Shown piece by piece: positions 1-30,186 of a stretch of DNA of 64,000 bases. Location: the sequence record MK250027.1; one strand, given 5' to 3'. The first letter of the stretch is position 1; the number at the start of each line of letters is the position of its first letter. The notes beneath the pieces were generated by a model. The model made no database searches. It worked only from the letters and a program-made list of their open reading frames with translations, and was not told the origin of the DNA. A program made the position numbers and the translations under genes.

Positions 1-3000
1 AAAGTTGCACATATAACAATACGTTCTGTTACTGATGAAGCGGAATTAAAAGAAATAAAACAATATCTTCCAAATAATGAATTAATATGGGAAGAAAAGA
101 ATAGTGTTTTATGGATAAAAACAAACAATAAAACAGTACAAATTGGAGGTACTAGTAATTCAAATAATAACGGAAATCAAAATAACAATAATAGTGATAG
201 TATGACACAAGAAGAATTAATAAAAGCCCTTAAGGAAATGGGTATTGTTTATGATTCAAATAATGGGTTAGAATTAGAATAGGCAAAAGTTGAGGACATT
301 ACTTTTATTAATTCTAATTTGACAGACAAATATGTATATTCAATAGATTCAGAAGGAAATCTACATTCTACTATAGTTCCTAAAGTAACATTGAAATCAC
401 GTGTTGCAAATAAAGGCTTATATGAATCAAATAAACCAGGTTCTACATTTACAAGTCGTGGATTCGTCGCAAATCTCGTGTGTGGTGAGAAGAATACGGA
501 ATTAGGAATTGATAATACATTAAGTGCAAGTTCAAATGGTTCAATATTAAATGAATCTGATAGAATTCACATTTCTCAATTTTATGCTCCATTATCAACA
601 GATATAGAAGAAGGTAAAATAGGATGTTCTCATGCATTTATAGAGTTAACAAATACATCTCCATATGATTTCTAGTTAGATGGATGCTATTTGCATTTCT
701 TCTCACTTAATGATACAAATTAGACAACATATTATAATTTACCATTAAAGGGTGTAATTCCTGCAGGTAATACATTTTTGATTAGAGGCAAAAAATATGC
801 TGATTACAAGAATTCCAATGTATTCATTAAGGTAAATTCATTTGATATAGAATGGTTTATAGAAAAAGATCAACTTATAGATTTAACCGTTAATACTATA
901 TATAATGGATATGCACTTGCGTTAACATATGGTAATACAGTAGTAGAAAATGGAGTAGAAACAGAAATTAGTCCAGTAACAACATTAGCAAAAGTAGATA
1001 CAGATAAAACAAACAAATATAGAGATAATTATATTGACGGTATTATATATTCTTATAAAGTTGCTAATATTCCTAATACATATAGAACATGGGCTATATT
1101 TAATTCCGGATATAATGTATTATCTAATAGCTTATTTAGAGAAACATTCTTATTGGACCCATCAAAACAAGGTTATCAAGCATTGAATTCAAATAAGAAG
1201 GATACATCTAGAGTACGTCATGCTACAACAGCAGATTTCTAGTTATTATCTTTAGCAAATGAATTCATACAATTCCCAAAATCTGATTCAGTAAAAGCCG
1301 TTTCTGATTATACACCAAAAGCATCATTTGAACATAAAACAGTTATTACAGAAAAGAGTAATATTGATTTAAATAAACCAAATATGATTACATGTGCGTT
1401 TGGTATTAATATGTTAACAACAAGATGTTTTAACTGGATTTCAGGAGGTATTTTTGATGAATTCATTTGGATTAGAAAGAAAGGTAGTATAACAGCTTGG
1501 AAAGATTGTGTACGATATGAATCTTATACAAGTTCAAAATGTGGTGTTGTTACAGAAAAATCTACTAATGAAATTCAAAAGAAAACATTTAATGTTGATA
1601 ATGAAAAGATAAAGGAATTAAAAGAATGTGTATATGATAGAATAACAGGTATATTTCCTGGTACTACCACACAATATACTGCACATAAGGTAATAGTTAC
1701 ATTACCTACGCCGTCAACTGGCACATCAGAATATGAATATTGCGTTGGACGACCATTATTAGATGGTACACCTGATCCTGATCATACAAATGTATCAGAT
1801 CCATATACATTTACAATGTATGCAAGTTCTTATGTTCCTAGAGTTTATCAAACATCTGACCAACAAGGTTTCCATTGGATTGAATATCAAGTATGGGCTG
1901 GTGCAGCTAAGAAATTAAATGAATACATTAATAATACTAAGAGTACAACATATATGCCAGTATTAGTAAATACTGGTGATATGACTCAATCTGGTTCTCG
2001 TATATCAGAATGGTATGATTATTATGAAGCTGGTAAGTGTTTGTTTAACCATCTTGAACAAATGAATGTTGTTGGTAATAATGACCTTGCAAATATTGAT
2101 CCTACTATATTAGGTACGGGTGATGATGCTGGTAAATCAAATTCATTCTATTTCCATGTATTCTATTGTTATGAAGTTGATGATTTTGAAGGTACTGCTT
2201 ATCCTATCATTAATAAGAAATATATTCCATCATTATATTACTTTGGCACAACAGATTATAGATTCATAATGGTTAACTCAGAAATCACAACAAAATGTTG
2301 TAATGATTGGTTTAATATTGGTAATTATAACATTTATACAGGTTATACTATTGCATCTTCAAATAATACATATAAAACAGATAATACATGGACACCAATT
2401 TATGATAGATTATATGCTATTATGAATAATTTTACAGGTAAACAATTTATAACTGCATGTCATGAAATGCCATTTACCGTTATTACAAAAGCAAATATTA
2501 AGAAAGAAACAAATATATTAGCAGCATAGAGAAGTGCATCTGGTACATCATTGGTAGGTTCTCACTTAAATTCTATAACTGCTGAAGATACAGGTTTTGG
2601 TTTTAATTGGTTTTCAAGATTACTTGAATATTTTGCAAGTAAAGGTAAGACTAAATTATGTATTGGTGGACATAAACATACATATGCTATGACATTCCCT
2701 ATTAGAGAGAATTATACATATACAAATAATGGTGCAACTGTTGATTCAAAAACAACACCTATGCCAATGTCAGCAAATCTTAATAATAAAATTGAGCAAT
2801 CTGTTAAATGGACAAAAAAATATACATATAATGCAGATACCTGTACATTTACAGAAAGTACATCTGGCACAGAAACAGTAAATACAAGTAAATTACCTTA
2901 TATTACAAAAGATGTGAAATCAATGTCTTATAATGGTACAACAACTATTGCACAAGCTGCAAGCGCTATCTAGGGATTCTTACCATATCAATACTTAAAT

Positions 3001-3357
3001 ACGTTAACAACAAGTAATGCAATAACTTATTTAATGTGTTAGGCTACAGGTTATAAATATTCATCAAATAAAGAATTACCTGCATATACATAGGCATTCT
3101 CTGAACTTATACCATAGACAACAGAGGCAGAAAAACCAGCTTCAACATAGAAATTCCCTATGTTTATTGATATTACTTTGAATAATACTACAATTACATT
3201 TAAATTGATAAGTGTTACTAACGTATTTGATTCTGCATATTTGTTTACTCAGCGTACATATGGTACAGAAAATAGTGGATTAAACTATATGAAATTAGGA
3301 TCTAATTCTTTATATGGTACATGGCAAGCGTCATCAACAAATTTAAAGACTCTTTAA
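1..3357 (+). CDS. 5'-truncated large protein with lamin-tail-like domain and calcineurin-like (purple acid phosphatase type) metallophosphoesterase; TAG=Gln
   Basis: Frame 1 is open from base 1 to TAA TAA at 3355 with about ten in-frame TAG, joining track ORFs 319, 778, 1384, 2551 and 3160. LTD-like FIELTNTSPYDFQLDGCYL...GVIPAGNTFLIRG; metallophosphoesterase motifs SDQQ, NTGDMTQ, VGNND, GGHKHTY. Confidence 0.85.
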
Positions 3358-3383
3358 TAAAAATATCAATCTAATATAATAAT

Positions 3384-6300
3384 ATGAAATATAATGGAAC
3401 AGATAATATTATAACTGATAATGACATCCTTGTTACTTCCAGCGCTGGAAGTAACAAGGATCTTCATACAGTTATAGAAGAACAACAATATGACATTGAT
3501 GAATTAAAATCAAATGTCAAATGGATTTATAAATACGGTGGTGTCGGTGGTGTCGGTGGCTCCGGAAGTGGTTCTGTAAGTGGTGGAAAATGGTCTGCAG
3601 ATGTATATATTAATGATGTGCCAGTAACTAATGGTTCTATAACTGATTTATCGCAAAAACTTATTAATGATATAGCTCCTATTACTGTCAAAGTTTCTAT
3701 TAAAAACCCTTCTGCTGGTGGATATAAGTTTAAATTGGAATATGGATATGATGATGGTTCATTCCAAACATATCCTCAATCATTAACAACAGATAATAAT
3801 TGTAGTGTAGAATTTAATCTTAAAATTTCAAAAAATTCACAATTAGTTATAAAAGTAACAGATATAGATAATAATTATAAACAGACGATATATAAGTACT
3901 ATATTTATGGTTTAGATTATAAAATAATTCCAATGACTTATAATAGTCAAGGTGTTTTATATGAACTTAAAGATTTTGATTATAAACCTAGTCAATTTCC
4001 AAATGGTGTTGTTTATAGATTATCAATTAATAATTTCGCTGGATTTATAATTAATTATAATATTGTAAGTACTATTGATTGCAAAATTATATAGATTAAT
4101 GAATAGAATTATAAACTATATAATACAGATAAAAATAATGGTTCATATTATGATAATGAAAATTTAAAAGGTTATTTACAATCAAATGATACTATAATTA
4201 CATTAGATTATTTAATAACGCAAGATACTTTGAAAAATGAACTTAACTTTGGTTCTCAAACATTCATGGCGTATATAGAAAGTATAAGTAATGGTATTTC
4301 AAATAAAAATGAAGTAAAATCAGAATATTCTATTGTGCCTGATAGTAATCAATATGTTATATGTTTATCTGAATCTATTATGGGTAAAGTTTATGATGAT
4401 AATACAAATATTAGCATAGTAGAAGCACAAAAAGAAGGAAATGCGTTTAATGTAGGTGATTCCGTATCATTTAAATTAAGACCATTTAATTTCTCCTCTG
4501 ATACAATTGCAATTAATTATACATTAATTAATACGGAAAATGATATTAATACTTCTAGTACTATAAATTTAAAAGCAGGACGTTATATATCTCAATCATT
4601 TAAAGTATATTCGGGATGGAATAAGTTAATAATTAATACTAATATTGTAAAATATTATTATGGTGTAAAAATTTCAGCTTCTGTAAACTGGTATAATCAA
4701 AACGGTGAAAATAATTCAAAGGCAAAGAATCTAGATTTATCTTATGTTCGTTTTTATAATAGTATATCAGATAATATGAAAAATGAAACCAATTTTAAAT
4801 AGATATATGTCAATAACTATTTAGAATTAAATACTAATATAAATGCATAGGATAAAGTTATTAATTTATATAATAATAAAACGATAAATACAGCTACAAA
4901 AGTAGATACTCACTTTGCATTTAGTATTCAATTCTCAGGGGCTAATAATACAGATGATACTATTTTTGAATTAAAAAATGAAAAGAAAGATATATTATTT
5001 TCTGTAACATAGAGTTCTATTAAATGTAATTAGTTTACTAGTAATAATGATATAAAAATATATATACCAAAAGAAAATAATTATACACCATCTGATGCAA
5101 CTAAATATCATTTAGTTGATATTTATATTAAAAAAACAGATCCATATACATTAACAAAAACAGTTAATAATACAAATTCTGTTGATATGCAATATTATTT
5201 AAATGATTTAGCAGATGATATAGACGTTTCTAATTCTAAAAAAGAACCTCAATATTATATTGAAGTATATATTGATGGTATTACAGATGGTGTTACTAAA
5301 TATTTTGTATCAACATATCCAAATATATGTTATTTATGTTTAAAAAATATAAATGTATCATATAACTTATTTGAATTAGGTAAATTTAATAATGAATCAT
5401 TAAAATTTAATGATATTGACGCAGATTTATATTATTACACATATAAGTATATATTAACTAAAGGAAGTGGTGTTACAAAAAATAATATAGACTTAATATA
5501 TAACTTATCATCATTAGATTATAGTGCATCAATTTCTTCTGATTTAACAAAATAGTTGATATTAAGAAAGCATAATCAAATATGTATATCAAAAGAATAT
5601 TTAGAGCAGTTAAAAAAAATGTTAGATGTGCCTATTTATATAATAAATGTTGCACATACACGAGAGAATGATAATATTACATCTATTTTTTAGTGGTTAA
5701 ATGGAACGTATCAAGAGACTGATGATATTACTGCATGGCCTGTTCAAACGATAAGTGTTCAAGGAAAACATAAAACAGGTATTACGTATGTCGCTCCAGA
5801 TGATACAGTAGGTATAGAAGTTGAGTTTCCTGATGACGATGCATATACATAGGCATTGTTTAATATAAATATTCAAGGTTCATCAACTAGACAAAATCAT
5901 GGTAAAAACTTAGATTTAATCTTGGTTAATAAAGATACAGATACTCATAATAAATTATTATATTCTCCTAATTTTGATGAAAATGATTCAAATACATATT
6001 TACCAGAATCTAAATTTACATTAAAAGCAGATATTGTAGACTCAGGACATTCTAATAATACTGTAATGGGTAAATTTATTAATCAGAATACATAGAAATT
6101 TGATATAGCATCAAATGGACAATATAAAAGTTATATTAAAAACTGTTTGGAAGGATTTCCATGCATAATTATATTAAATGTTGATTATGAAGTTTCGGGT
6201 TCATCTTCTGAATATTATTTCATGGGTTTATATAACTTTAACTTAGGTCGTGGTTCATATTCAAATTTAGGATATGTTAATAATTCTATATTTGATAAAC

Positions 6301-9300
6301 AATTATCATCTGTAACAGCACTTAAACCATTTGAATTTTTTAAAACAACAACAGATGAATATGAATTGAGAACTGATTTTGGATGCGCAGAAATAACAGG
6401 TAATAATCATAAATTTGATTTTTCACAATGGGATGATACTATATTATATCCATTTGAAAATGAACATGGTAATACATATATGTGGGATGATATAGTAACC
6501 AGTTAGGAAGGTGCATTTAAAATCGCATTAAAATATTTCGTAAGAGATATTGCTATTTCTGGAGGTTATATATTTGATTATTTAGGTAAAGAAGCGATAG
6601 ACCATAAAAAATGGGATGCAGATGGTGGATGGAACCATATTGGCGGTGTTCCTGATGTCAGTAAACAATATAAGCGTACATCAGATGATACTACTGTATC
6701 ATATTATGATCCTACCATTAAAGTACCAGAAAAATCTAAATGGCAAACTATATTCCAACGTACAATGTAGGATGGTTTTGAATATAATGGAGATATATCA
6801 TATTCTCGATTAGATTATACATCCGCTGTAGAATATTACACAATTTGTATGGCATTTGGTTTGGTAGACTCTGTATAGAAAAATTTAAATGTTCGTACTT
6901 GGACATTAAATAAAACAAATAGAAAGGAAACAGATCCAGAAGAAAAAGATTTAACACGTTCTAAATTCTATATATCATTCTACGATATGGATACATGTTT
7001 GGGTATCGATAATAACTCTAATGATACAACAACTTTCTGTTTTTCTGATTATTGGGAATCAACTGATACTGAATAGAATGGTGTACATATTATTTCATCT
7101 ATTAATCAATACAGAGATTATTTTTCTGAAAAATATACAATTACTGATGCTTCTACAGGTATAAAATCTGGTGAAATTGGATACGATATACCATCATCAT
7201 TCTTATTTGGTGTCGCAAAATATGGTACAGAAGTATTTAACACAGATGAACTTTTAAAATTAGATTATCTTGAATATCCAACACCTACATTATTATGGAT
7301 AAGATATAGAGCAGGAAATACAACAGCATATGATAAACCTGGTACAGGATCTTTATAGAATGCACAATATTTCATGGATACTTATTATAAAAAACATATG
7401 GAAGGTGTGTCTGAATTAGTATTCAATTTAAATTATAAAGTTAAATATCTTGCATATAATATATAGGAAAAATGGGAATTTGATTCAACAAAGAAGAATA
7501 CCTTTATAGGAACATATACGATAAATAATAAAATTAATTATTCTTCAGGTTTCCATAATGATATACAAAAATTTAGAGGTCGTTCTATATATCGTGTATA
7601 TGATTGGTTAAATTCTAGATTACATATATTAGATGCATATTTTAATTTACAAGATTCACGAGAACTTTTATCTGTATCTGAAATAGAAAAATAGCATCAA
7701 ACAAATAAAAATACCACTAATACAGAACTTGTTCAATTACGTTTATCTGGCAATAACTTGGATGACAGTGTAAAAACTATAGTATCATTATTAAATACTT
7801 CTAATGATATTAACATTAAGAGTCAAATATTTAAATCTAGCACAACAGATAATCCAAAAATTAATTTTCCATCAAATCCTATAACGTTACAAGTTAAAGC
7901 TCAAAATTATTCACCAATAATGTTTGATGTCGGTGGTACAATTCAAGGTAAATATTTATTACGTTCATCTGCAAATACGTATTAGATAACATTTAGCGGT
8001 TCCGGCAATATAGCATTTGCACTTTATGGTTCAAATTAGATAACATATTTAAGTAATGTTACTTGGTATACACCAACATCAATGATAATTGAATCTTCAA
8101 ATCTTACAAATATTTATGGAAATAATCCTACATATAATGTAAGTGTTAATAAATTAATGTCTCCTGCATTATAGAAAATTGAATTAATGGGTTATAATTA
8201 TACGGGTTCATTAGAATTATCAGATATATCTACATATTCAAATTTAAATTTAATTAATATATCAAATACAGGAATAAATTTAAAGGCGACAGATATTAAT
8301 GTATCAACAATAAATGTATCTGGTGTTTCTGCTACAAAATGTGAAATTTCAAGATGTAATAAATTATCATCTTTAAAATTAAGTGAATTAAAAGTAACAG
8401 ATGAATTTTTATTAACTGTTAATTATTCAAGTAATGTATTATTTAATGAAATTGAAGCAAAACGATTCTCAGTTTCTTGCTCAGTTGTAAATTAGAATAA
8501 TACAATAGTTATTGATGGCTCACGTGGTAAATTTTAGACACTTGAAGAATTAACTATCTCTGGTTTTGCAAAAGTATAGATTTATTCTTGTCCAAAATTG
8601 TAGAAAGTTACTATTAGTGAAATTACGTCTGGAGATGATGCAAAAGATATATATTTGAAAGAACTTGCTATTATTAATTGTTGTACAGATAAATTATGTA
8701 CAGAATTTAATGTACTTTCATCTACATCATCAAGTTATGATAAAACATTAGATTTATATTCATTTAAGAAATTATCTAGAATATGCTTCTATGGAACATA
8801 GAATTTTGAACAAGCAATTTTACCAGAAACATTAAATTTGCAAGGTAGTGAATTTGGTAATTGTAAATCATTGAAATATGTAGATATTAAAACAAGTATT
8901 GGTACAAAAGCAAGTAAAATTACTATCAATGGATATGATAAATATGTATTATCTTCATCAGCTAAAAGTACTAGTGGATTAACATTTATTACATATACTG
9001 CACCAAATGTAGGATGTTTCTATAACTGTTATGAATTTAAGATGGAACGTACTGTAAATGATAGTTCAGTTGTACCTATTCGCGTAAGTAATTCCGTAAA
9101 ATCTTTGGAATACTTATTTGGACTTGATTCTCATAATAGTAATATAAATTTAGCAAAAATCTCGAATTTTATAGATAATATTTCTATAAGTAATAGTATT
9201 ACATCTATTAATTATATGTGTATGAATCAAGATGGCATTAAATTATCAAAGGAACAATTTGTCGCAGATGGACCAGATAAAGCAACCTTACACTTAGGTA

Positions 9301-12074
9301 CATTTGGTAAATTATCTAGTGGTAATCTTGTAGATGCATTTTATATTAATACGATATATATTAATAAATGGATATGGTATGATAAAGATAAAAAACAAAT
9401 AATCAGTTGTAATAATATTAATAGATTATTTGGTCAAGGTTCAAAGAATTTATATATGACAATAGATTGTTTATATCCTATACTGAATAAGATCTAGTAT
9501 TTAATTGGAATTACTAGTGGGCAGACGATAATATATCCTATATATTCAGGCTCTTCATAGAAATTTGATGTATATACAATTCTTACAGATGAAAAGAAAA
9601 CAGAAACTTCATGGAAGGATAAAACAACATATACAAAATCTTATACATTTAATGGTACTATTGGTAATTTGATTACGAATCAAGTTGTTCCTGCTCGTGC
9701 CATATTTGTTAATGAAACAGGTGCTTCTCATACAGTAGATTCTCAAGATAATACAGGTGCAATATATCCTACTGCAATGACAAGATTCAGCGGTATTTCA
9801 TTCTGTGCATCTAATGTACAATGGGATTTATATGGATTATTTAGTAAGAAATGGAAATTATAGTATATAGATTTTTTCCAAACATTTGGATTCTCTACAG
9901 TAACAGAATATGAAGATTTATTTAATGCTAAATTTATGCCATCAACATTAATAGATATTAAACATAGTTTAAATACATCATTCAACACATCTGTAGATTA
10001 TACAAGATTCTTAGATTTTAACACATTAATTACTAATTATAATAATTCAGTTCCATCAAATGCAATGTTTAATTACGAAAATGGAGATTCTCTTAATTAT
10101 GCTACAGGATTAACATTTACTAAACATATTAGCAGTGATACATTTAAAGAATGGATGGTATATATATTTAAAGCAAATAATGCTCAAGGTATAACTAACT
10201 TATTCAGAAACTGTAATATATTAGTAAGTCAAGCAGAAGCAAATAATAAATGTGATTTCAGTATAGAAACAATATTTAGCGATTATGGCGAAAATCTCGT
10301 AATAAATTAGAAAATACATAATATATATTGTTTGTTCTATAATTTACATTGTTATATTAAAGATAAGTATGATATAACTAAAACTAGTTAGTCTGCTGAA
10401 GTATAGTATATGACATTTGGTACAGATATGTTTAAATACCTTCCAAATATAACTACTGTTTCATCAGCGTTTACAAATAACTATTGGAATGACCCTATAC
10501 CATTTAATGTATTTAATAAACGTTATAAATGTGATGATACATATTATTATCTTGAATTCTTTGAAGGTACTGATATATTAGTAACTGATGAGAATAAAGG
10601 TCTTAATGAATATAAAGATAAAAAGAAAATAAGAAAGAAGATAAAATATGTTTCATATAGTTATAAATAGGTAATGAATTAGGTTAGTTCATGTTTCGCT
10701 AATATTCATTTTAATCCTGCTTATATTTCTAACAGATATACTAAAGGTTCTGATATTATTAAAGAAGCAGGTATTAATTATTATCAATTTATAAATGATG
10801 ATAACACTGTTATAAATAATGATGAGAAAATATATATTTCTGAAAAAATAAAAGTATTATTACGTTCTACTGGTAATAATAGTGATTATATATACCCATC
10901 ATATGAATATTATGATACATTAAATTTGCATGGTGCATTCTATGAAGGTAATTTTGAAAAAGCCGGCACATCTACTGGTGGTACTAATGTAACGTCTTCT
11001 ATTCAAAAAGCACCATTAACAAAATCAGTATCTGAATATTTAGAATCACTTATAGTTACACCAGATTTATTATATGGATGTCAACCATCTGCTTCAATAT
11101 AGGGTATAGTTTCTCAATCTAGTGTATCAAAAGATATGTTAACTGGTATTTTACCAGCTCATTTCTATAAGCAAATGAAAACATTAGGAGGTGGTACATA
11201 TGAAGTGTTTACAGGATGTCTTGTGATACCAAATTACGTAGGTACATATGTAAATTATGATTCTAACGGAACATTGAAACTTCGTTATAACATATATACA
11301 TTTATACCAGAAGAATTTGTAAATTCTGATATGAATAATTTATAGAATATGTTTAGATTCTATATACATTGGCCAAAACAAGGTCAAACAGAATCAGGTG
11401 TGCAAACATATGATTTTTATGTATTATCTACAAGCAATTCATTTGGAAGTAATATAACGTCATTAAATAATGCATTCCCTGTTTCATCAGTTGTTTCATA
11501 TCAATCATATGGAACTACAATAATAAATTATCAAACAGCTAACAGATCAATTCACTATAATTTACAATGTACATATTAGACTCAATCTTATGAAGCATCA
11601 AAGAAATCAGAGATATTTGGAACACTTAATTATGATAATTTGAGATATATATCAGTGTTTGATACAGGCCTTAATATGGAAATATATAAGTCATTAAATG
11701 TAACTAATTTAATAACAAGTATAAACTTATTATATGGTTACTATGGATATATATTTAACTCTTCATATGATACAAGAAATATAATATTAACAACAAATTC
11801 AGAAAATAAAAAATATTATTGTATTAATGTAAGTGCAAATTATCAATGGCAATCTAATTAGTTATCATGTAATATAATATTCCCTATATGTTCTAACACA
11901 TCAGAAACAACAAGAAGATTATTATATTTCTATGATATTCCATAGAATGCTAAATTTAATACTAACATAAGTATGTTTTCAACTTCAGAAAATAGAGAAT
12001 ATTATAAAAATATGTTTGATAGTATGTTTACATTCAATGATAATGAAAAATATAGTTATGCTACATATGAATAA
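3384..12074 (+). CDS. Giant (2896 aa) probable virion protein with CotH-like kinase domain and LRR-like C-terminal half; TAG=Gln
   Basis: All long + ORFs from 3384 to 11861 share frame 3 and the gaps I translated break only at TAG; ends at TAA 12072-12074. CotH-like motifs IQGSSTRQNHGKN, FTLKADIVDSGHSNN, EGFP...FMGLYNFN, FGLVDS(Q)KNLNVRTW, FYDMDTCLGIDN. Gly-rich linker near the N-terminus; LxxLxLS-type repeats after about 8100. Confidence 0.8.
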
Positions 12075-12169: not shown

Positions 12170-15100
12170 ATGGATAATAAATGTTCAAGACCTGCTTTGA
12201 TCCATAGCTTTAATCCTAAACCATTCAAAGATATTGATACAGCCATTTTCGCGCTTAATAAGAAAGATTTAGCAACAGGTGAAATAGCTATAGCATATTA
12301 TAATGATGTTAATGAAACAAGAGGAATCGGGGCAGTAATCGCAACTGGTAATATTTTACCAGGTGGAAATCAAATATTCAAGAATACTGTATATACTGAT
12401 AAACTTATAAAAGTTGTAAAAGAATCTATTGAATCTAACTCTGTTGATATAAGTGTAATCGAAGAAAATGTAAATAATAACATTGCAGATATTGCATTAA
12501 TTAAGGAACAACTTAAATCGTTGTCTATTGATTCAAGTAATAATCAATCTTCTGTTGATAATAAGATGAATGAAATCAATGAAATCATCAGTAAAATGAA
12601 AGAAGATATGAATAATATCATAGATAATATTCATAAAGTTGTTGCTGATGCATCATAGTCTCTCACTGATTCTACAGATACTATATATACCGATTTCAAA
12701 GGAGCAGACACTTCTTTAAAAAACTATATAGATGATGAAAACTTAAAAATTTCTCAAAAAATTGATGATATTTCATTAAAAAATGTAGAAAATAAGCAAG
12801 AATTATTAGATAAAATTAATTCCAATACATCTACTCGAAACTACAATTTATGATGTTTCAACATAGTTGACTGATGACATTTCTATATTAAACAATAAGG
12901 TAGAAACTTATAATAATGACTTAAATACATCTTTAACTTATAATGTGTCTACATTAAAATCTCTTATATCAGATAATAAGAATTATGTTGATAAAAGAGA
13001 AAATCTTATCAGAGAATATATTGATTAGAAAGATAATCAATTAATATGGCTAATAGGTGATACTTCTAAACATATTCATTTCCGTATAGATAAAGAAGTT
13101 CATGACTTAAATGATAGAATTACATCTGAACACCTTGATATGAATAAAGTTGTTGCAGATAATAAAACCGATTCAAAACGCTATACAGATTAGGAAATAT
13201 CATTAGCTAAAGATTATGTGGATGAACAAACTGAATATCTTAAATCAAATATATCTCAAACTGAGTTAAACTCAAAGAAATATACAGATGAATCTATTAC
13301 TTCATTAAATAATAAGTTATCAGAATCAATTAAGAATACGTCTATATATGCAAAAGATTTATTTGATAACTCTAATGAATATGCAGATAAATTAAATAAT
13401 TCATAGAAAGTTTATATTGATGATGAACTTAGAATGCAAGATGAACGTTTAGTTGACAATATAAATTCTGTAAAAGATACTATTAATACAACAAAATCTG
13501 AATTAAATGTTTCTATTAATAAATCATATGATAATGCAGTAAAATATACAAATAAAGTACATCAAGAGACTTTACAACTTATTAAAGAATATGATAATAA
13601 AGTAAGATAGGATTTTTCTGAAGCGGATATTAAGTTAGATAATAAGATTAATGACACTTCTACATTAATTTGGAATTATATAGGCAATACATCTGATGCT
13701 ATTGTTCAATTTGTTAAAGATACATCCAAATTAAATTGGGATCATACAAATGATACATCTGATGCTATTGTTAAATATATTAATGATACATCTGACGCTA
13801 TTGTTAAATATATAAATGATACTTCCGATGCTATTATTCAATATGTAGATTAGCAAGATCAATTATAGAAAAATTATACTGACAAAGAAGTATCTACTTT
13901 GAAATCATATGTAGATACAGAAAACACTTCTATTATTGCTTATGTTGATAATCAAGATGATAAAGTATTGAGTGAAGCCTCAATTTATACAGATGGTAAA
14001 ATTCAGGAAGTAAATAATACTATCCATGATCTTGATGAAAAGGTAGAAGATTATAATAGAAATACAAATAAGTTACTTGATGATGTTTCTGAAGGTATTA
14101 TAAGAGATTATACAACTGCAATTAATAATCTTAATCAAGATGTTTCCAGAAATGATACATGGTTATATAACCATATTGAAAAATATAATACAAATTTATC
14201 TACTGCAATTACAACTAATGATTCAGATACTAAAAAATTAATTAAAGATGTTTCCGATCTTCTTGATTAGAAAATAGAAGATACATCAGATATTCTGCAA
14301 GGTGTAATAGATGCATTGAAAACACAACATAATACTGATATTACAACGACAAATACTTCTATTATGTCTTATGTTAATAATTATAATACTAGTACATCAG
14401 AAATGATTAAAGCAATGAACACTAGTATTAATACATATTGGGAAAATGCCGATGAGACTATCGAAAATTTACTTACTAATGTTTCTAATGGTATTCTTCA
14501 AAAAGTTAATAATATACAAAAAGATTTATCTACTTATATTCAAACAGCCGAATCTACTTTAAAATCATTATATGAACAAGCAGATGACGGACTTCTTGGA
14601 TATATTAATAGTTAGGACGCAAAACTTAATAGTAGTATAAATGATATTTCAACAAAGATTGTAAATAAATTTAATAATGATATTAGTATATTAAATGATA
14701 AAGTTGATACTAATTTATCTAATTTAAATACATCTATTAATAGTGTTCATGATATATTATTTAGGAAAATTGAAGATACATCTACTGAAATTGTAAGAGC
14801 TTTGAATACATCTATTAGTAATATTAATCAAAAGCTTACTACTAATGTAACTGAAATTTATGATAGGATAGATGACGTTAAAGATGATATTTTTGAAAAA
14901 CTTAATGTATCTATTAATGGTATCAATAAAATATTAACTGATAAAGATACAGCATTAGATAATAAGATTGATAATAAGTATACAACTATTATTAATGTAA
15001 TGAATACATCTGATAGTATTTTAAATGGTCGTATTACTAATTTAGAAACCAAACATACAAATGAATTATCTGAAGCTGTTAAAACATTAAATAAATTAGT

Positions 15101-16745
15101 TTCAGATACAAAGACAGAATTATCTGGTCTAGATACAGCAAATAAAACAGAATTAATAACAAAATATGATAAGTTGACTTCTGATAATAAGCAAGCTATA
15201 TCTGATTTGAAAAAAGAATTAATCAATGTATCTAATGGTATCATTACAGATTATAAGAAATTATCTAAAGATACATCTACAATGTTAGATAATAAGATTG
15301 AAGATATTTCTACTAAGATTGTAACTGCATTGAATACATCTATCAGTAATGTATATGATGAATTAACTGGAAGCATTTCAACATTATCAAAAACCGTAAA
15401 AGATACATCAGAAAATATTGTTAATAAATTAAATACATCTATTAATAAAATATTCAGTGATTTATCAAAAGCAGATACATCTTTATCTACACGTATTGAT
15501 GATGCAAGTAATTTAATTCCTAAACCATAGACAGATGCAATTACTACAGTTGATTCACAGAAATATGTATGGAGTAACGGTAATGTAGCTTCTGAAAAAT
15601 GTGTTGTTGGTGCAGGTTAGACAAATATTGTAGTAAAAGATAATAAGGTACAGTTTGTATTAGGTGCATGGAATAATGGTGCAATAGGTTTACGTTTTAC
15701 AGAAATACCAGAAACAAATACAGTTGCAAATGGTCTTTTATCTGTTGATTCTAAATTGAAGTATGATAATTACGCAAATTAGATTACTACTATTAATTCA
15801 GATATTGCAAAGACAAATACTAATTTGACTTAGGAAATTAAAGATAGAACTAATGCAGATGATTCGTTATAGTTAAAGATTACTACTATTAATGAAACTA
15901 CAATACCTAATTTACATGAAGCAATATTAACAGAAATTTACAATAAGTATGATCCTGAAATTAACTCTATAAAAAAATCAATCAATACAACGTCTACTAC
16001 ATTACAAACTAATATTGATAATTTAAGAAAAGATGCATCTACTGAAGCAAAATCTAATCTTGATAAGTTAAATACTAGTATCAATAATAATGTATATACA
16101 CCGTTGAAAAACTTAATTACTGGTGAAATTAGTAGAGTTGAAACTGATTATAAAAATGCAGATAGTACATTAAAAAAAGCTATAGAACTTATTAATAATA
16201 CAACTATTGATTCTAAAGTTAATTCACTTAAATCTGAATTAACAAAGAAGTATGATAATGAAATTAGCACAGTAAAAAATACTATTACTAATAATCAGGA
16301 TAATATTATCAATACATAGTTACCTAATCTTAAGACAACAATAGAAACAGATTATAATAAGAAGTTTGAAACAGAATCAAATGAGCGTAAGACCACTGAT
16401 TCATAGTTAAGAACTGATATTGAATTGTTAAGTACGAAAGTAGATGGTATTAATACTAATATTGGTGATAACAATACTAATGTTACTAATTTACAAACAA
16501 CAATTAAAGAACTTCAAGCAACTATTATTGAGTTGAATTCACGTATATTAGCAGTTGAAGCATACGGAACAACAAATGTCGATTTTGCAAAACGTATTGA
16601 GACGCTTGAATCTAAATACAATAAGATCACAGCAATTGAAAGTGATATTACTGGTATTAAAGAGCGACTTGATAATATTGACACTGAACATGAAGAATTA
16701 TATTCAGGTGTTTAGGATTATAATGATTCTATTAATATTAGCTGA
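12170..16745 (+). CDS. Coiled-coil fibre-like protein, paralog 1 (about 1524 aa if a +1 frameshift near 12833 is corrected)
   Basis: Frame 2 runs from ATG 12170 to TGA 12851-12853; frame 3 is open from 12780 to TGA 16743-16745 with TAG read-through. N-terminal GEIAxAYY domain shared with the next two genes; [DN]xS and 11-aa repeats. Confidence 0.7.
13653..13850 (+). repeat. Six in-frame 33-bp tandem repeats (DTSDAIVKYIN type)
   Basis: Units such as gatacatctgatgctattgttaaatatattaat (13752) and gatacatctgacgctattgttaaatatataaat (13785). Confidence 0.85.
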
Positions 16746-16767
16746 TAATATAAATATATATAGAAAT

Positions 16768-16806
16768 ATGGTGATATAGAAAATAAAAATCTATATCACC
16801 ATTTTC
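16768..16806 (+). terminator. Intrinsic terminator (GGTGATA family)
   Basis: Stem ATGGTGATATAGA/TCTATATCACCAT followed by Ts. Confidence 0.8.
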
Positions 16807-16846
16807 TATTTTAGATAAATATTTAAAATATAAAGATTTAATATAT

Positions 16847-18505
16847 ATGAATGTTTACGATTCTCCACATATGCATGGAGTAAAACCACATCCATGTCCA
16901 CCTCCTCCTGGACCACATCATGATCCTTTTCATCATGTTCCTTGTTGTGAACCACCACATCATTGTTTACCTCCACATCATTGTGAACCACCATATGGAT
17001 TAATCAATCATTATAATAAAGTATGTTTCAAGAACTATGATGAAGCTGTATATAAATTAAAAATAAAATCATTACTTCCTGGCGAAATTGCATTCGCTTA
17101 TTATTTTGATAAGAATGCAGAATATGGTATTAACGCAATTGCAGCTGTTGGTTCTATTAAATTAGGAGCAACTAATATAATCTATGATAACGCTAATGAT
17201 ATTCAATCTCTTATTGAATCCCTTTCAACAAAGGTAGATTCAAATAATGAGAAATTTGAAACAATAGTAGATCAATTCGATGATATTAATAATGTTATTA
17301 AAGACATTAGTTCTCGTTTACATAAAGCTGAAGATAAAAATAATTCTTCTAATATTGATGCATCTATTTCAGATATAGATAATAAGATTGATACTATTAT
17401 TCAAGATAACGTATCAATACATGACCGTATTGATACCCTTGATTCACAAATGGATCAAGTAACTGATTATATTGCATAGCATGAATTAGATTATCAAGCA
17501 CTTGATGCATCAGTTAAACAACTTCGTGTTGATGTAGATTCATTAGGACTAGATGATAAACTTGATGAATTAGATAAGAAGATTAATCAAACAAAAGAAG
17601 ATATACTTCTTGAAACAAAGGCAGACAATGCATCATTAGAAGCTAAACTTACACAAGAATTTAACGGTAAATTACAAGATTATTCTGATTCATTAGATAA
17701 TCTTAAAGTTGAAATCACTCAACAGATTACAGATACAGTTGAACCTTTAAAAACGGATATTTATGATTTACAAGTTAAAACAACTGAATTGGAAACAAAT
17801 ATCGGTAAAGCAAAGGATGAAGCAGTTACTGCATCCAAAGAATATACAGATAATCAAATATCAGACAAGATGCAAGGAATTAATAGTTCACTTACTGATA
17901 TGTCTAATACTATTCATGATTTATCTGATTTAATTACCAATGTTTCTACTAATGCAGATAATGAACGTAAAGAATTAAAACGGTATATTGATTAGGTTAA
18001 GTCTGATATTGAAGGTGAAAATACTCAATTTAAATCTGAAGTAAATTCTGAAATTAATAAACAGAAACAATATATTACAGATACTATTAACGGATTTAAG
18101 GCAGAATATACTGCAACAACAGATAAAGCAATTGATGAAAAAGTAAAGGTTGTATCTGATAAATTAGATAATTATATCAATGAATCTACAACTAAACATT
18201 CTGAAATTGAAGCAAAGATTTCTACTATTAAAACGGATTTTGCAACATATAAAGGTGAGTTAAACGAAACTATTGCTAACAAAATTGCAGAACAAAATAC
18301 AAATATGAGAAATTATTTGGATAACGCAATTTCAACAGATAGATCATACTATGATTCACTTTATGCACGTAAAGATCAAATACCTGTAAATGTTGTATCA
18401 GGTGCAGGTGTTACGGTAGAAAACGGTGTTGTTAATCTTAATGTTGACAGTAATGGTGTATTAACAGTAGGTGGAAAACGTTATCAATTACAACAATTGA
18501 ATTAA
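16847..18505 (+). CDS. Coiled-coil fibre-like protein, paralog 2 (552 aa) with His/Pro/Cys-rich N-terminus
   Basis: Track ORFs 16847, 17789 and 18305 are in one frame joined by TAG; TAA at 18503. Contains LLPGEIAFAYY. Confidence 0.8.
16946..16996 (+). repeat. 18-bp tandem repeat encoding CxPPHH
   Basis: tgtgaaccaccacatcat tgtttacctccacatcat tgtgaaccaccatat. Confidence 0.8.
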
Positions 18506-18530
18506 TAATTTTAACAAAATTAAATATATT

Positions 18531-18570
18531 AGAAGAGATTATTTTTATAAATAGTCTCTTCTTTTCTTTT
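18531..18570 (+). terminator. Intrinsic terminator
   Basis: AGAAGAGATTATTT/AAATAGTCTCTTCT stem (one G-U) plus T tract. Confidence 0.75.
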
Positions 18571-18587
18571 AATAAATATAAAAAGAA
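18571..18587 (+). promoter_or_regulatory. Putative late-promoter 17-mer (copy 2)
   Basis: AATAAATATAAAAAGAA, identical to 12138-12154. Confidence 0.55.
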
Positions 18588-18604
18588 ATTTAAAACAAAT
18601 AAAC

Positions 18605-21600
18605 ATGGCAGGATTTATGGATAACAAATATGGTTCACATGTTCCACCTGTTGGACTTAATGGTTTCAATAAAATATGTTTTACTGATTAGAAAGAAGCT
18701 GAAACTATGTTATTGGATAAGCCGTTAATGCCTGGCTAACTCACATTCGCATATTACTATGATAATGTTGCGACTAATGGTGTAAATGTAATGGCAGCAG
18801 TCGGAACATTAAAAGGAGAAGGTTCAAACCATATTTTTGTTAGTTATGAAACTATAAATTAGTTAATTGATTCCATTGATGATTCATTTGAAGATTTCGA
18901 TACTAGTTTAATATATATTCGGAAAGAACTTATGAGCAAGCTTTCTGCTCTTGAAGATGAACAGAATAATTTAGTTTTACAGATAAGAGATAATGTTAAT
19001 AATTCTAATGTAAGTTTTAACGAAATTTATACTAAATTAGAAGAGTTAGAAACAAATGGTAAACAATATACAGATGAGAAAATTCAAGAGATAAGAGATT
19101 ATGTCGATACATCTGTAACAAGTAAAATCAATGATTATGAAACAGTAGTTTCTGATATGATTTTAGATGCGTCTACAAAATTAGATTAGATGCAAAAAGA
19201 TTTTGAAGATAAAGCTTAGGATATTCTTGATCGTAGTAATGAAGTATATGACAATCTTGATGTTTCTCTTCGTAATTATGTTAATAATGAAATGTTAGGA
19301 ATGCAACAGTTTGTTCATAACGAAACAACACAAGCCGTTTTAGATATGAATTCAAAATATGCGGTTTTAAAGAAAGTTGTTGCATCTATTAATTCATCTG
19401 TTAATGATATTGATAAAAAACATAATGATAAGGAAACAGAATTATCAAGAAATATTGTAGAAACAGCAACACAATTAACAGAAGACTTAGAAATTGCAAA
19501 TGTTTCAATCATTAGTTATATTGATCAATAGACATCATTATTCAATAAGAAGATTGATAATAAAATCAATGAGCTTGAATTTAATACAAAAACTAAAAAT
19601 ATAGATTTAACAAATATCGTAGAAGAATACCAACATTCAGTTAAGAATGATATTGCTGTATTCAATGCATCTATGAGAACATATGTTAAATCTAGTCTTG
19701 CCACAGTTCAAACAGATGCTAATTCAAAATATTCAGAATTAAAAACTTATGTAACATCAAATGATGCTTCATTATTAAATTATGTTAATGCAATGGAAAT
19801 TGCACAAAAGACATATATTAATAAACATGATTCTGAAATCAAATCTTGGATTGCAACATCAGATACTTCTTTATTCAATATTATTCGTTCAACAGATAGT
19901 AAATTAAAAGATGATCTTGACGCGATGGATGCAAGACACCAATCAATGTATCGTACAGTCGAATCACGTCTTGATAACCTTATTGATGATATTTCTACAG
20001 ATCTTACTATCATGGTTAATGAATACGGTAAGGAAGTTAAAAACTTTACACGTAAACATGTAAATGATTTAGAGAATAAAGTTAAAGCACAAAATGTAAG
20101 TTTAATTAACTATATTGATGATAAATCTCAAGAAGCAGTAAATGAAACTCGTTTACTTAATGCTTCACTTAGAACTCAATTAAAGAATACAACAAACTTA
20201 CTTAACGCAAGTATCAATAATGCTATTCAATATACAGATGATGAAATATCTAAATTAAAATCATATGTTGATACAGAAAATACTTCTATTATTACTTATG
20301 TTAATAATCAAGATGATAAAGTAAGATTCTATGCAGATTATGGAGATAATGAAGTTCGTAAATATATTGATGAACTTGAAGAGCAACTTAAGAAATATTC
20401 TATTACTGGTGATTCTTCTGTTATCAATTATATTAAGTTAACAAAAGAAAATATTGAACAATTTGTTAAAGATGCAGATGATGATGTTTTAAAGAAAGCA
20501 TATATTCATGATGATGAAATCAAAAATGAAATGACAACTGAATATAATGCATTTGTTCGTAAGCAGAAAGATATTGATGCATCATTATTAAATTATGTTA
20601 AGAATACAGATACTTCATTATTTAATTACATAAAGGATAGAGATGAACAAATAAAGAGATGGATTGCTATTGGTGATACTTCACTTTATAACTATTTCAA
20701 AACATAGAATGCATCTTTGTTTAATTATGTAAAAACATAGGATACAGAAATATAGAATAATCTTGTTAATAGTGTTTCTAAGATAGAAAATGATATGGCA
20801 AAATTCGAGACCAGTATCAATTCAAAGATTGATTCTGCTGATATTGCTCTTGATAATAAATTAAATGCTAATAATGCTTCTATCTATACAATTCTTTCTT
20901 CTAATGATGTATCAATCATGAGTGCAGTTAATAAGAAAGATTATGAACTTGAAACAAAATTAAATAATCAAATTTCAGAAGTAAAGAACGAATTAGAAAC
21001 AAAAGACTCTTCTATTCTTAATTATGTATTGAATGCTGATACATCTATTAAATCACAACTTAATATAATTAAAGATACTATTAATAATGATATTAAAGTA
21101 TCTCTTAAAGAACTTGATACAAAAGTGGATGTAAATGATGCTTCTATTATATCTTATATTAATACAAATGACCATAAGATTGGTTCTTATATTGATACAG
21201 AAATTAATCGTGTAGAAAATCATTGCAAATCAAATGATACATCTGTTGTTAATTTTGTAAAAAAAGAAGATTCATCTATAGTTAATTATGTAAATGGTAC
21301 AGTTAAACAAGAATTACTTGATAGAATTAATGATACAAATACATCTATTATTAATTATGTTGCTGAGAATTCATCATTGTTCAATTATGTCGTTAATAAT
21401 GATACTTTACTTAAAGCACTTATTGAAAGTAAAGATGGCTCAATTTTGAATTCATTAACAAGCGCTGATGCTTCTATTATTCGTTTAATTGAGAAATATA
21501 ACTCAGAATTACATAATAAGATTAACGCAAATGATTCATCTATTAACTCAAAAGTTGATAAGTATAATTCATCTACATTTAGCCACTTTACATTAAAAGA

Positions 21601-29665: not shown

Positions 29666-29737
29666 ATATTTTGTATTATATTGTTTATATTATTTATTTT
29701 TTGATAAATAAAGAAAAATATATTGATTATTTATATA

Positions 29738-30160: not shown

Positions 30161-30186
30161 AAACTTTTTTACTTCAACATCATCAT

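What the first reader, a model, noticed from the sequence alone, without database searches (positions are those of the whole stretch)
1..12074. Adjacent giant phosphatase and CotH-kinase proteins at the head of a fibre gene cluster
Seen: a lamin-tail plus purple-acid-phosphatase-type protein sits immediately upstream of a 2896-aa protein with CotH kinase motifs and LRR-like repeats; both are TAG-rich and followed by three fibre-like genes. Known: CotH kinases phosphorylate spore coat/extracellular proteins and often co-occur with lamin-tail domains. Inference: a virion-borne kinase/phosphatase pair that might modify the Ser/Thr-rich fibres or host surface components.
Basis: partly seen in the sequence, partly recalled or inferred. 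Interest (0 to 1): 0.68.

Follow-up and report, generated by a model that had tools for sequence, protein, structure and literature searches.

The report
Paired phosphatase and CotH kinase cassette
Two neighbouring giant late genes of the Prevotella megaphage Lak-B8 encode a purple-acid-phosphatase-like enzyme and a highly divergent CotH-type kinase fused to leucine-rich repeats; the same two-gene cassette is found, always together, in many crAss-like gut phages and in Bacillus phage G, where the domains are already annotated but nobody knows what they do.

Summary
The window is Prevotella megaphage Lak-B8 (100% identity), which reads TAG as Gln. Protein 1 (window 1-3357; cut by the window edge, full length 1,570 aa) has a lamin-tail Ig fold plus a purple-acid-phosphatase-like metallophosphoesterase (Z 22.6). 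Protein 2 (3384-12074, 2,896 aa) contains a CotH kinase fold (Z 19.2 to B. cereus CotH) followed by BspA-type LRRs. Pfam misses the CotH domain. A profile chain through phage G gp353 maps the two experimentally essential CotH aspartates (D228, D251) onto invariant D1162 and D1201. The phosphatase keeps six of seven PAP metal ligands (Tyr to Gln, motif-III His to Asn). The pair is an obligate cassette: the same 35 deposited phages carry both, as do 74 of 74 informative IMG/VR loci in each direction. Carriers include Lak, crAss-like phages, DAC/SJC03 and Bacillus phage G. GenBank already annotates the crAss-like versions as "phosphatase" and "spore coat protein-like/CotH kinase". Virion location, substrates and activity remain untested. 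The neighbouring "fibres" are Lak-specific helical-repeat paralogues that are not notably Ser/Thr-rich. Verdict: real and catalytically plausible; a new member of an annotated but unstudied phage family.

The parts
1..3357 (+). Protein 1, C-terminal 1,118 codons of a 1,570-aa LTD + PAP-like metallophosphoesterase (5' end lies upstream of the window; in-window Met at 202)
   Evidence: (P0123, 100% identity)
553..1056 (+). Lamin-tail-type Ig-fold domain of protein 1
   Evidence: Pfam LTD E 6e-4, below cut-off; Foldseek probability 1.0 to lamin Ig folds; VIA Z 7.3, model residues 38-205
1291..3354 (+). PAP-like module: FN3-like N-domain plus binuclear metallophosphoesterase domain and C-terminal beta elements
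   Evidence: VIA Z 22.6, 386-392 residues aligned to kidney-bean/sweet-potato PAP, model 284-971; Foldseek E 7e-14; hhalign 99.95% to phage G gp352, which passes Pfam Pur_ac_phosph_N and Metallophos
1858..2679 (+). Metallophosphoesterase motif block: TD(1072)QQG, NTGD(1112)MTQ, VGN(1145)ND, CH(1273)EMP, GH(1343)KH(1345); all listed ligands invariant in 30 homologues
   Evidence: the same signature in phage G gp352
3384..12074 (+). Protein 2, 2,896 aa, 38 in-frame TAG=Gln; start 26 nt after the protein 1 stop
   Evidence: P0003 99% identical gene call
3384..5750 (+). Lineage-variable N-terminal ~790 aa of protein 2 (short conserved helix ending KYGG, Gly-rich linker, beta-rich region); not alignable to phage G gp353
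5751..7703 (+). CotH-type atypical kinase core (residues 790-1440), about 290 aa larger than B. cereus CotH through family-conserved insertions
   Evidence: AF2 pTM 0.82; Foldseek probability 1.0 to 5JDA/5JD9; VIA Z 19.2; hhalign 99.0-99.2% to Pfam-positive CotH proteins
6867..6884 (+). Catalytic-loop motif D1162-S-V-Q(TAG)-K-N1167, equivalent to CotH D228...N233
6984..6992 (+). Metal-binding motif D1201-M-D1203 (FYDMD), equivalent to CotH D251-Y-D253
8106..9083 (+). Leucine-rich repeat region, BspA/LRR_5 type (approximate limits, residues ~1575-1900); LRR-like repeats continue towards the C-terminus
   Evidence: profile hits to 4fs7/4gt6 E 8e-10 and 1e-6; LRR_5 in homologue P0088; LRR families in gp353 and crAss002 gp20; homology to gp353 runs to near the C-terminus
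12170..26605 (+). Four downstream ORFs (12170-12853, 12783-16745, 16847-18505, 18791-26605) of apolipoprotein-like helical repeats; paralogues of each other and of two ORFs upstream of protein 1. Context only, not a conserved part of the cassette

Best explanation
The locus is the Lak-B8 copy of a strictly conserved two-gene phage cassette. Gene 1 encodes a multi-domain protein: a lineage-specific N-terminus, a tail-fibre-like Mtd_N-type segment, a lamin-tail Ig fold, an FN3-like PAP N-domain and a binuclear metallophosphoesterase. Gene 2 starts 26 nt downstream (overlapping or abutting in other phages). It encodes a giant with a lineage-specific N-terminus, a CotH-type atypical kinase core with intact catalytic Asp/Asn/Asp residues, a long BspA-type LRR region and a conserved C-terminal part. 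SHOWN: the folds, the conserved catalytic and metal-binding residues, orthology to crAss-like gp20/gp19, crAss002 gp19/gp20 and phage G gp352/gp353, obligate co-occurrence and fixed order, late (TAG-recoded) structural-module context, and near-absence from sampled host-phylum chromosomes. INFERRED: both are active enzymes that work as a unit and are carried on the virion as enzymatically armed appendages. The variable N-termini would serve as adaptors to each phage's particle. The conserved bodies would carry out one common phospho-transfer and phospho-hydrolysis task on a target that does not depend on host envelope type, most simply each other or another phage or universal envelope component. 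The kinase can only work where ATP is available, that is in the infected cell during assembly or at or after penetration. The PAP/PhoD/GpdQ-like hydrolase needs only metals and could act outside the cell.
For: Identity of the genome and code: PMC11165621. Protein 1 fold; invariant ligands; orthology to Pfam-positive gp352: 99.95%, E 1.8e-37. Protein 2 fold. Profile chain: canonical CotH to phage-G-type CotH 97.6% (E 2.7e-12), then phage-G-type to the Lak core 99.2% (E 6.5e-20); direct to gp353 99.0%, and 99.9% over 1,251 columns for the whole body. D228/D251 numbering verified on a Sporosarcina CotH that is 3e-150 to 5JD9; their essentiality is from PMC7821199. Catalytic residues are invariant across 15-37 sequences down to 25% identity. 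Cassette: the same 35 phage records hit by both proteins, with protein 1 upstream on the same strand wherever coordinates were compared; 74/74 and 74/74 informative IMG/VR loci; tight spacing. Structural context: portal and peptidase upstream in Lak; head genes upstream in cr124_1; the Crassvirales review lists phosphatase domains among tail-spike subunits (PMC10136315); Mtd_N, ConA-like lectin and LRR domains in the phage G orthologues. Phage specificity: 1 of 401 Bacteroidota genomes matched.
Against: No virion proteome, expression or activity data were found for any member. The phosphatase lacks the PAP Tyr ligand (Gln1115) and the motif-III His (Asn1146), both usually important for catalysis. 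Extracellular ATP is scarce, so a kinase on the outside of a particle has no obvious energy source. In phage G the pair sits among non-structural genes (GGDEF, nucleases). Conserved C-terminal bodies with variable N-termini are unlike classical receptor-binding fibres. The fold models are predictions, and the residue mapping to CotH is transitive: the direct profile comparison fails.
Confidence: 0.5

Rival explanations
1. Morphogenetic role inside the infected cell, by analogy with the spore coat. The CotH kinase phosphorylates phage structural proteins (possibly itself or protein 1) late in infection to drive or pattern assembly, and the phosphatase reverses or edits this. Presence in the mature virion is incidental or absent.
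For: CotH's only proven role is phosphorylation-driven assembly of a protein shell (PMC7821199). ATP is available only in the cytoplasm. The genes are late and TAG-recoded. The pair is embedded among large structural-type repeat proteins in Lak. Strict kinase/phosphatase pairing fits an antagonistic pair on one substrate.
Against: The neighbouring repeat proteins are not conserved with the pair and lack Ser-rich tracts like CotB/CotG. LTD, FN3, lectin and LRR domains are typical of extracytoplasmic binding proteins. PAP/PhoD-type enzymes are normally extracytoplasmic (established knowledge of those families).
Confidence: 0.2
2. Largely non-catalytic adhesin or structural giants. The CotH and phosphoesterase folds serve as binding modules (as fungal CotH invasins bind a host receptor), with the LRR and Ig domains mediating attachment.
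For: Mucorales CotH proteins act as invasins that bind GRP78 (PMC6561750). Protein 1 has lost the Tyr ligand and the motif-III His. There are abundant binding-type domains.
Against: The catalytic Asp/Asn/Asp and six metal ligands are invariant down to 25% identity and between Gram-positive and Gram-negative phages. That is hard to explain without catalysis or at least nucleotide/metal binding. Binding surfaces would be expected to vary with the host.
Confidence: 0.12
3. Ejected effectors. The proteins are packaged and delivered into the host cell with the DNA (like N4/crAss vRNAP or T7 internal proteins), where the kinase and phosphatase rewire host proteins early in infection.
For: The pair lies near the portal and a peptidase and among helical-repeat proteins that resemble ejection or tape-measure proteins. 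ATP would be available after ejection. The conserved enzymatic body is independent of envelope type.
Against: Proteins of 1,570 and 2,896 aa built of Ig, FN3 and LRR beta-rich domains are poor candidates for passage through a tail channel. Mtd_N and lectin domains in the phage G orthologues point to external fibres. No homologue was found among the ΦcrAss001 virion chains in the PDB sequence set.
Confidence: 0.1
4. Artefact: the long ORFs arise only from reading TAG through and are not real genes.
For: Under table 11 the region breaks into ORFs of 100-380 aa.
Against: TAG columns behave as Gln. There are hundreds of full-length homologues, including standard-code ones with no in-frame TAG (crAss002 gp20, SJC03_83, phage G gp353). 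The fold models are confident. Code 15 is published for Lak (PMC11165621).
Confidence: 0.01

Closest known systems
crAss-like phage gene pair: cr124_1 (Burzaovirus faecalis) gp20 'phosphatase' + gp19 'spore coat protein-like protein; similar to spore coat protein/internalin/CotH kinase'; ΦcrAss002 gp19 'phosphatase' + gp20 'transferase/internalin-J, LRR'
   Same: Orthologous full-length proteins (about 37-44% identity to the Burzaovirus type, about 25-31% to the crAss002 type), with the same order, strand and tight spacing, the same catalytic motifs, and a structural-module context.
   Different: Lak belongs to an unrelated deep-branching order with a 550-kb genome. The N-terminal regions and the flanking genes differ. 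The Lak records carry no annotation. ΦcrAss002 uses the standard code.
Bacillus phage G gp352 (metallophosphoesterase) + gp353
   Same: The same two-gene cassette. gp352 is Mtd_N/LTD/Pur_ac_phosph_N/Metallophos with the same TDQQG, GDxxQN and GNND signature. gp353 is CotH + LRR + C-terminal body, alignable over 1,251 columns.
   Different: Gram-positive host. The proteins are shorter (866 and 2,055 aa). gp353 passes Pfam CotH and has a ConA-like lectin domain before the kinase. Its neighbours are non-structural genes.
Bacillus spore-coat kinase CotH (B. subtilis CotH; B. cereus CotH structures 5JD9/5JDA)
   Same: The same atypical kinase fold (Z 19.2). Equivalents of the catalytic D228, N233 and D251/D253 are conserved.
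   Different: Stand-alone protein of about 360 aa, against a 650-aa core with conserved insertions inside a 2,896-aa protein. There is no direct sequence or profile similarity. Known CotH substrates (Ser-rich CotB/CotG) have no counterpart here.
Purple acid phosphatases (kidney bean, sweet potato), and related PhoD, GpdQ and SMPDL3A phosphodiesterases
   Same: FN3-like N-domain plus binuclear metallophosphoesterase fold (Z 22.6; GpdQ 18.8, SMPDL3A 18.1, PhoD 16.1). Five metallophosphoesterase motifs are present in order.
   Different: The chromophoric Tyr ligand (GDxxY) is Gln, and the GNH(D/E) His is Asn. The domain is embedded in a 1,570-aa phage protein with an LTD. The substrate is unknown.
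Bacterial LTD-containing extracellular or membrane-associated hydrolases (LTD fused to calcineurin-like phosphoesterases; Pfam PF00932 description, recalled from memory)
   Same: An LTD Ig fold N-terminal to a calcineurin-like phosphoesterase.
   Different: Those are cellular proteins, whereas this family was found in only 1 of 401 sampled Bacteroidota genomes when searched with the partner's core. The association recalled here was not tested directly.
Other phage CotH-domain proteins (CotH fused to hypervariable C-type lectin; short CotH + LamG proteins)
   Same: A CotH kinase domain encoded in phage structural regions. Benler et al. 2021 call such proteins 'currently unstudied' (PMC8008677). 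BFVD lists several named viral CotH models.
   Different: The short forms (585-790 aa) lack the LRR body and are not paired with a protein-1-like gene.

Membership tests
CotH kinase family (Pfam PF08757) | Match to the family HMM above the gathering score | tested here: not met
   No hit for the whole protein or four segments even at E<=10; none in a six-frame search of the nearest record; NCBIfam none. The orthologue phage G gp353 does pass (60.3 bits against a cut-off of 23.8).
CotH kinase family (Pfam PF08757) | CotH atypical kinase fold | tested here: met
   AF2 model pTM 0.82; 5JDA/5JD9 are the only confident Foldseek hits; VIA Z 19.2, 327/359 residues aligned, rmsd 3.8 A; the next best are PI3K/PIKK kinases at Z<=6.2.
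CotH kinase family (Pfam PF08757) | Profile-level homology to proteins that pass the family HMM | tested here: met
   99.0% to the gp353 domain; 99.2%, E 6.5e-20 to 15 PF08757 proteins. Those proteins match Bacillales spore-coat CotH at 97.6%. The direct comparison with spore-coat CotH fails.
CotH kinase family (Pfam PF08757) | Catalytic Asp (B. subtilis D228) and metal-binding Asp (D251), whose mutation inactivates CotH | tested here: met
   D228 maps to D1162, N233 to N1167, D251 to D1201 and D253 to D1203 through the two-step alignment. These are invariant in 15-37 homologues. The mapping is transitive and no 3-D geometry was inspected.
CotH kinase family (Pfam PF08757) | ATP-dependent Ser/Thr phosphotransfer | not testable with these tools
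   Requires a biochemical assay.
Purple acid phosphatase / calcineurin-like metallophosphoesterase (PF00149, PF16656) | Match to the Metallophos HMM above the gathering score | tested here: not met
   18.8 bits against a cut-off of 21.5 for the Lak protein. Met by orthologues: gp352 49.3, crAss002 gp19 30.3, P0133 25.1 bits.
Purple acid phosphatase / calcineurin-like metallophosphoesterase (PF00149, PF16656) | PAP two-domain fold (FN3-like N-domain plus metallophosphoesterase sandwich) | tested here: met
   Foldseek E 7e-14; VIA Z 22.6, 386-392 of ~424 residues aligned, rmsd 3.2-3.4 A.
Purple acid phosphatase / calcineurin-like metallophosphoesterase (PF00149, PF16656) | Seven invariant PAP metal ligands (Asp, Asp, Tyr, Asn, His, His, His), including the Fe(III)-tyrosinate that defines 'purple' | tested here: not met
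   Six are present and invariant (D1072, D1112, N1145, H1273, H1343, H1345). The Tyr position of GDxxY is an invariant Gln1115. The register was read from the motifs, and the PAP ligand list is from established knowledge. So this is a PAP-like metallophosphoesterase, not a true purple acid phosphatase.
Purple acid phosphatase / calcineurin-like metallophosphoesterase (PF00149, PF16656) | GNH(D/E) motif-III histidine | tested here: not met
   G1144-N1145-N1146-D1147 is invariant, with the same GNND in gp352.
Lamin tail domain (PF00932) | HMM match above the gathering score, or the lamin Ig fold | tested here: inconclusive
   The HMM match is below cut-off (20.6 against 34.3 bits). The fold matches lamin A/C and B1 Ig domains at Foldseek probability 1.0 but only Z 7.0-7.3, which is in the range common for small beta-sandwiches.
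BspA-type leucine-rich repeats (PF13306 LRR_5) | Repeated LRR_5 units | tested here: met
   The family profile hits LRR_5 structures 4fs7 (E 7.9e-10, several repeats) and 4gt6. Homologue P0088 gives only a sub-threshold LRR_5 match (25.2 bits against a cut-off of 27.7). Orthologues gp353 and crAss002 gp20 show several LRR families, near or just above their cut-offs.
Phage tail fibre/spike (virion appendage) proteins | Physical presence in the virion; encoded in the structural module; N-terminal attachment/trimerisation element | tested here: inconclusive
   The structural-module context is met in Lak and in crAss-like phages, but not clearly in phage G. There are weak Mtd_N (gp352) and collagen-trimerisation hits. 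No proteome data were found. There was no sequence match to the PDB chain set, which should include the crAss001 virion atlas.

The most novel reading that the evidence does not exclude
The cassette is a virion-borne kinase/phosphoesterase machine shared by horizontally unrelated phage orders (Crassvirales, the Lak 'Grandevirales', DAC/SJC03-like phages, phage G) and by hosts of both envelope types. On this reading it carries out a so far undescribed phosphorylation-dependent step of phage adsorption, penetration or particle assembly. It would be the first case of a phage structural appendage that uses reversible phosphorylation.
Probability: 0.25. Interest if true: 0.75.

Novelty: new member of a known kind. 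Interest (0 to 1): 0.5.

Why it matters
CotH-type kinases are understood only in Bacillus spore-coat assembly. Their presence in phages has been noted in a single sentence as "unstudied". This analysis adds three things. First, the phage version keeps the catalytic residues even though it is invisible to Pfam. Second, it never occurs without a specific PAP-like phosphoesterase partner. Third, the cassette spans some of the most abundant human-gut phages (crAss-like), the largest gut phages (Lak) and the cultured megaphage G. Because ΦcrAss002, the DAC/SJC03 phages and phage G can be grown, the function is directly testable. A phosphorylation step in virion assembly or host entry would be a new element of phage biology and possibly a determinant of host interaction in the gut.

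Tried and rejected
- **Direct family scans of protein 2:** nothing CotH-like in Pfam (whole protein and four segments at E<=10), PHROGs or NCBIfam.
- **Sequence and profile searches against PDB chains:** no CotH, PAP or crAss001 virion protein was found with the single proteins, the two family profiles, or even a Pfam-positive CotH profile.
- **Direct hhalign, spore-coat CotH against the Lak core:** failed at probability 0.2-0.6%. Only the chain through phage-G-type proteins works.
- **Complex prediction on the conserved N-terminal helices:** not run, because the daily limit was exhausted. There is therefore no evidence either way on physical binding.
- **Sequencing runs:** no RNA run holds the stretch.
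- **Shared N-terminal '...KYG' helix between proteins 1 and 2:** hhalign probability 4%, not significant.
- **'Third gene' of the trio:** no detectable homology between Lak and the crAss-like or crAss002 loci, so I dropped the idea of a conserved three-gene module.
- **Short CotH + LamG phage proteins:** not paired with a phosphatase.
- **Literature:** no virion-proteome statement for crAss002 gp19/gp20 or phage G gp352/gp353. Nguyen et al. 2016 is not held.
- the codon column was mis-indexed and is ignored; one search gives the corrected values.
- **Big representative-protein search:** not used, because no claim here rests on absence of relatives.

Full report
**Identity of the window and genetic code.** Bases 1-12074 are 100% identical to Prevotella phage Lak-B8 (MK250027, positions 434001-446074) and about 78% identical to the Lak-A genomes. 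Under table 11 the region breaks into ORFs of 100-380 aa. With TAG read as Gln it gives 1..3357 (5'-open) and 3384..12074 (2,896 aa, 38 in-frame TAG), followed by four more long ORFs.

The recoding is shown by the data, not assumed. At the 38 TAG-aligned columns, homologues carry Gln in 17.2% of cells. That compares with 18.0% at Lak's own CAA/CAG columns and a 3.5% background. One TAG (Q1165) lies inside the catalytic-loop motif, where 19 of 25 homologues have Q. Standard-code orthologues (crAss002 gp20, SJC03_83, phage G gp353) have no in-frame TAG at all. Code 15 is also published for Lak (PMC11165621). In-frame TAGs are confined to the late or structural ORFs of the window.

**Protein 1.** The window cuts this gene. 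The full product is 1,570 aa (P0123, 100% identity). Pfam gives only sub-threshold LTD and Metallophos hits.

An AlphaFold2 model of residues 600-1570 (pTM 0.87) matches plant purple acid phosphatases over both the FN3-like N-domain and the metallophosphoesterase domain (Foldseek E 7e-14; VIA Z 22.6 with 386-392 residues aligned at 3.2-3.4 A). Lower-scoring matches are GpdQ (Z 18.8), SMPDL3A (18.1) and PhoD (16.1). An upstream domain matches lamin Ig folds (Foldseek probability 1.0; Z about 7).

Across 30 homologues of about 40% identity, the candidate metal ligands D1072, D1112, N1145, H1273, H1343 and H1345 are invariant. Two positions differ from the PAP pattern, and both are also invariant: the Tyr of GDxxY is Gln1115, and the His of GNH(D/E) is Asn1146.

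**Protein 2.** No library recognises a CotH domain in it. A 26-sequence alignment showed a conserved core at residues ~826-1421. The family profile hits BspA-type LRR structures (4fs7 E 8e-10).

The AlphaFold2 model of residues 790-1440 (pTM 0.82) has B. cereus CotH kinase as its only confident match (Foldseek probability 1.0). VIA gives Z 19.2 with 327 of 359 residues aligned at 3.8 A, and the next best hits are PI3K/PIKK kinase domains at Z 6.2 or less. The core is about 290 residues larger than CotH because of insertions that are themselves conserved within the family.

**Catalytic residues.** B. subtilis CotH is inactivated by D228Q or D251A (PMC7821199). I obtained a canonical CotH from a Sporosarcina genome. 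It is 363 aa, matches the 5JD9 sequence at E 3e-150, and has D228 in QNFDGFVHN and D251/D253 in PWDYDATWG.

Direct profile comparison of 30 Bacillales CotH domains with the Lak core fails, but a two-step chain holds:
- Canonical CotH to 15 Pfam-positive phage-G-type CotH proteins: 97.6%, E 2.7e-12, 309 columns.
- Those 15 proteins to the Lak/crAss core: 99.2%, E 6.5e-20, 348 columns (also 99.0% directly to gp353).

Reading through the chain, D228 maps to D1162, N233 to N1167, D251 to D1201 and D253 to D1203. All four are invariant in alignments reaching 25% identity. The caveat is that the mapping is transitive and I could not inspect the 3-D geometry.

**An obligate, widely distributed and already annotated cassette.** Both proteins have hundreds of homologues. 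In crAss-like phage cr124_1 (Burzaovirus faecalis), the orthologues are annotated as gp20 "phosphatase" and gp19 [quoted passage not shown], just downstream of the head genes. In cultured ΦcrAss002 they are gp19 "phosphatase" and gp20 "transferase/internalin-J, LRR". In the 167-kb Bacteroides phage SJC03 they are genes 82 and 83.

In Bacillus phage G, gp352 is Mtd_N/LTD/Pur_ac_phosph_N/Metallophos, with the last two above Pfam's cut-offs. gp353 is ConA-like lectin + CotH (E 3e-16, above cut-off) + LRRs. Protein 1's family aligns to gp352 at 99.95% over 692 columns and shares the TDQQG, GDxxQN and GNND signature. Protein 2's family aligns to gp353 at 99.9% over 1,251 columns, from the start of the kinase to near the C-terminus.

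The co-occurrence numbers are as follows:
- **Deposited phages:** exactly the same 35 records are hit by either protein, with protein 1 directly upstream on the same strand wherever the coordinates were compared.
- **IMG/VR, baiting with the CotH core:** all 74 loci contain a protein 1 homologue on the same strand. In 73 it ends 2.0-4.1 kb before the core; in the exception (L135) the contig end cuts off the upstream side.
- **IMG/VR, baiting with protein 1:** 74 of 78 loci have the core 2.0-4.2 kb downstream. The other four end within 325 bp of a contig edge and are uninformative.
- **Boundary of the pairing:** shorter CotH + LamG phage proteins are not paired with a phosphatase.
- **Host-phylum chromosomes:** the core profile matched only 1 of 401 sampled Bacteroidota genomes, as a weak fragmented hit at a contig start.

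BFVD already holds named viral models of this fold. Benler et al. 2021 mention phage CotH domains as "currently unstudied" (PMC8008677). A Crassvirales review lists phosphatase domains among tail-spike subunits (PMC10136315). I found no paper that discusses the pairing.

**Context in Lak.** Upstream lie a T4-like portal (Pfam E 1.6e-59), a papain-like peptidase, a PRPP synthetase and two apolipoprotein-like helical-repeat proteins. Downstream lie four more paralogues of that repeat family. These are Lak-specific, have ordinary Ser+Thr content (14-23%) and lack Ser-rich tracts. They are therefore weak candidates for a universal substrate.

**Interpretation.** Four things are shown:
- There are two real late genes encoding a PAP-like metallophosphoesterase with an LTD and a CotH-type kinase with LRRs.
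- Their active-site residues are under strong constraint.
- The genes are inherited and exchanged only as a pair.
- The enzymatic bodies are conserved between phages of Gram-negative and Gram-positive hosts, whereas the N-termini are lineage-specific.

I infer, at about 0.5 confidence, that they work as a unit and are virion appendage components. On that model the variable N-termini dock to each phage's particle, and the conserved bodies carry out a common phospho-transfer and hydrolysis task on a target that does not depend on the host envelope. The kinase can act only where ATP is present, either in the cytoplasm during assembly or at or after entry.

The rivals are a purely intracellular, spore-coat-like morphogenetic role (0.2), non-catalytic adhesins (0.12) and ejected effectors (0.1). 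No virion proteome, expression or binding evidence could be obtained.

**Verdict.** The Lak genes are new members of a phage family that is annotated in relatives but functionally unstudied. The new elements here are the verified catalytic residues, the strict pairing and its breadth across phage orders. Interest is moderate, at 0.5.

Noticed in passing
window 12170-12853 and 12783-16745: The 227-aa ORF overlaps the next 1,320-aa ORF by 71 nt in a different frame. It resembles the N-terminal part of paralogues 16847-18505 and L118:16658-18031 (E ~1e-15). The two may be one gene split by a programmed frameshift or an assembly error.
   Followed up: no
L118:16658-20609 and window 12170-26605: Six paralogous apolipoprotein-like helical-repeat proteins (227 to 2,604 aa) flank the enzyme pair on both sides. 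They have weak PHROG hits to tape-measure and baseplate-hub families, and no detectable similarity to the genes following the pair in crAss-like phages.
   Followed up: partly
window 38000-64000 versus 1-38000: In-frame TAG codons are abundant in the large late or structural ORFs (10-38 per gene). They are absent or nearly absent from the ~25 short ORFs at 38-64 kb, which fits stop-codon recoding restricted to late genes.
   Followed up: partly
window 32112-38081 (- strand): A 1,989-aa ORF with 36 in-frame TAG has no Pfam hit. Its neighbours at 28283-32025 (460 and 612 aa) are also unassigned, and 27012-28211 is a 5'-3' exonuclease.
   Followed up: partly
L135/L136 (IMGVR_UViG_3300031994_000435, 28 kb): One viral contig carries two CotH-giant genes with a protein 1 gene between them, so the giant is duplicated in this phage.
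   Followed up: no
L271/L272 (genome G314, contig C1, bases ~3100-5000): This is the only hit among 401 sampled Bacteroidota genomes: a weak, two-piece match to the kinase core at the very start of a contig. It may be a phage contig binned into a MAG, or a decayed copy.
   Followed up: no
L118:2233-2994: A GIY-YIG homing-endonuclease-like ORF with 8 in-frame TAG sits upstream of the T4-like portal gene of Lak-B8.
   Followed up: no
P0123 residues ~125-155; P0002 residues ~30-55: Both proteins have a short, highly conserved N-terminal helix ending in 'KYG'. In some protein 1 homologues it grazes Pfam's collagen trimerisation domain (E ~5e-4, below cut-off). Profile comparison of the two helices is not significant (probability 4%).
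   Followed up: yes
Lak against crAss-like homologues: Lak proteins 1 and 2 are 37-44% identical over nearly full length to those of ~100-kb crAss-like phages, although Lak is described as a separate deep-branching order. This suggests horizontal exchange of the cassette among Bacteroidota phages.
   Followed up: no
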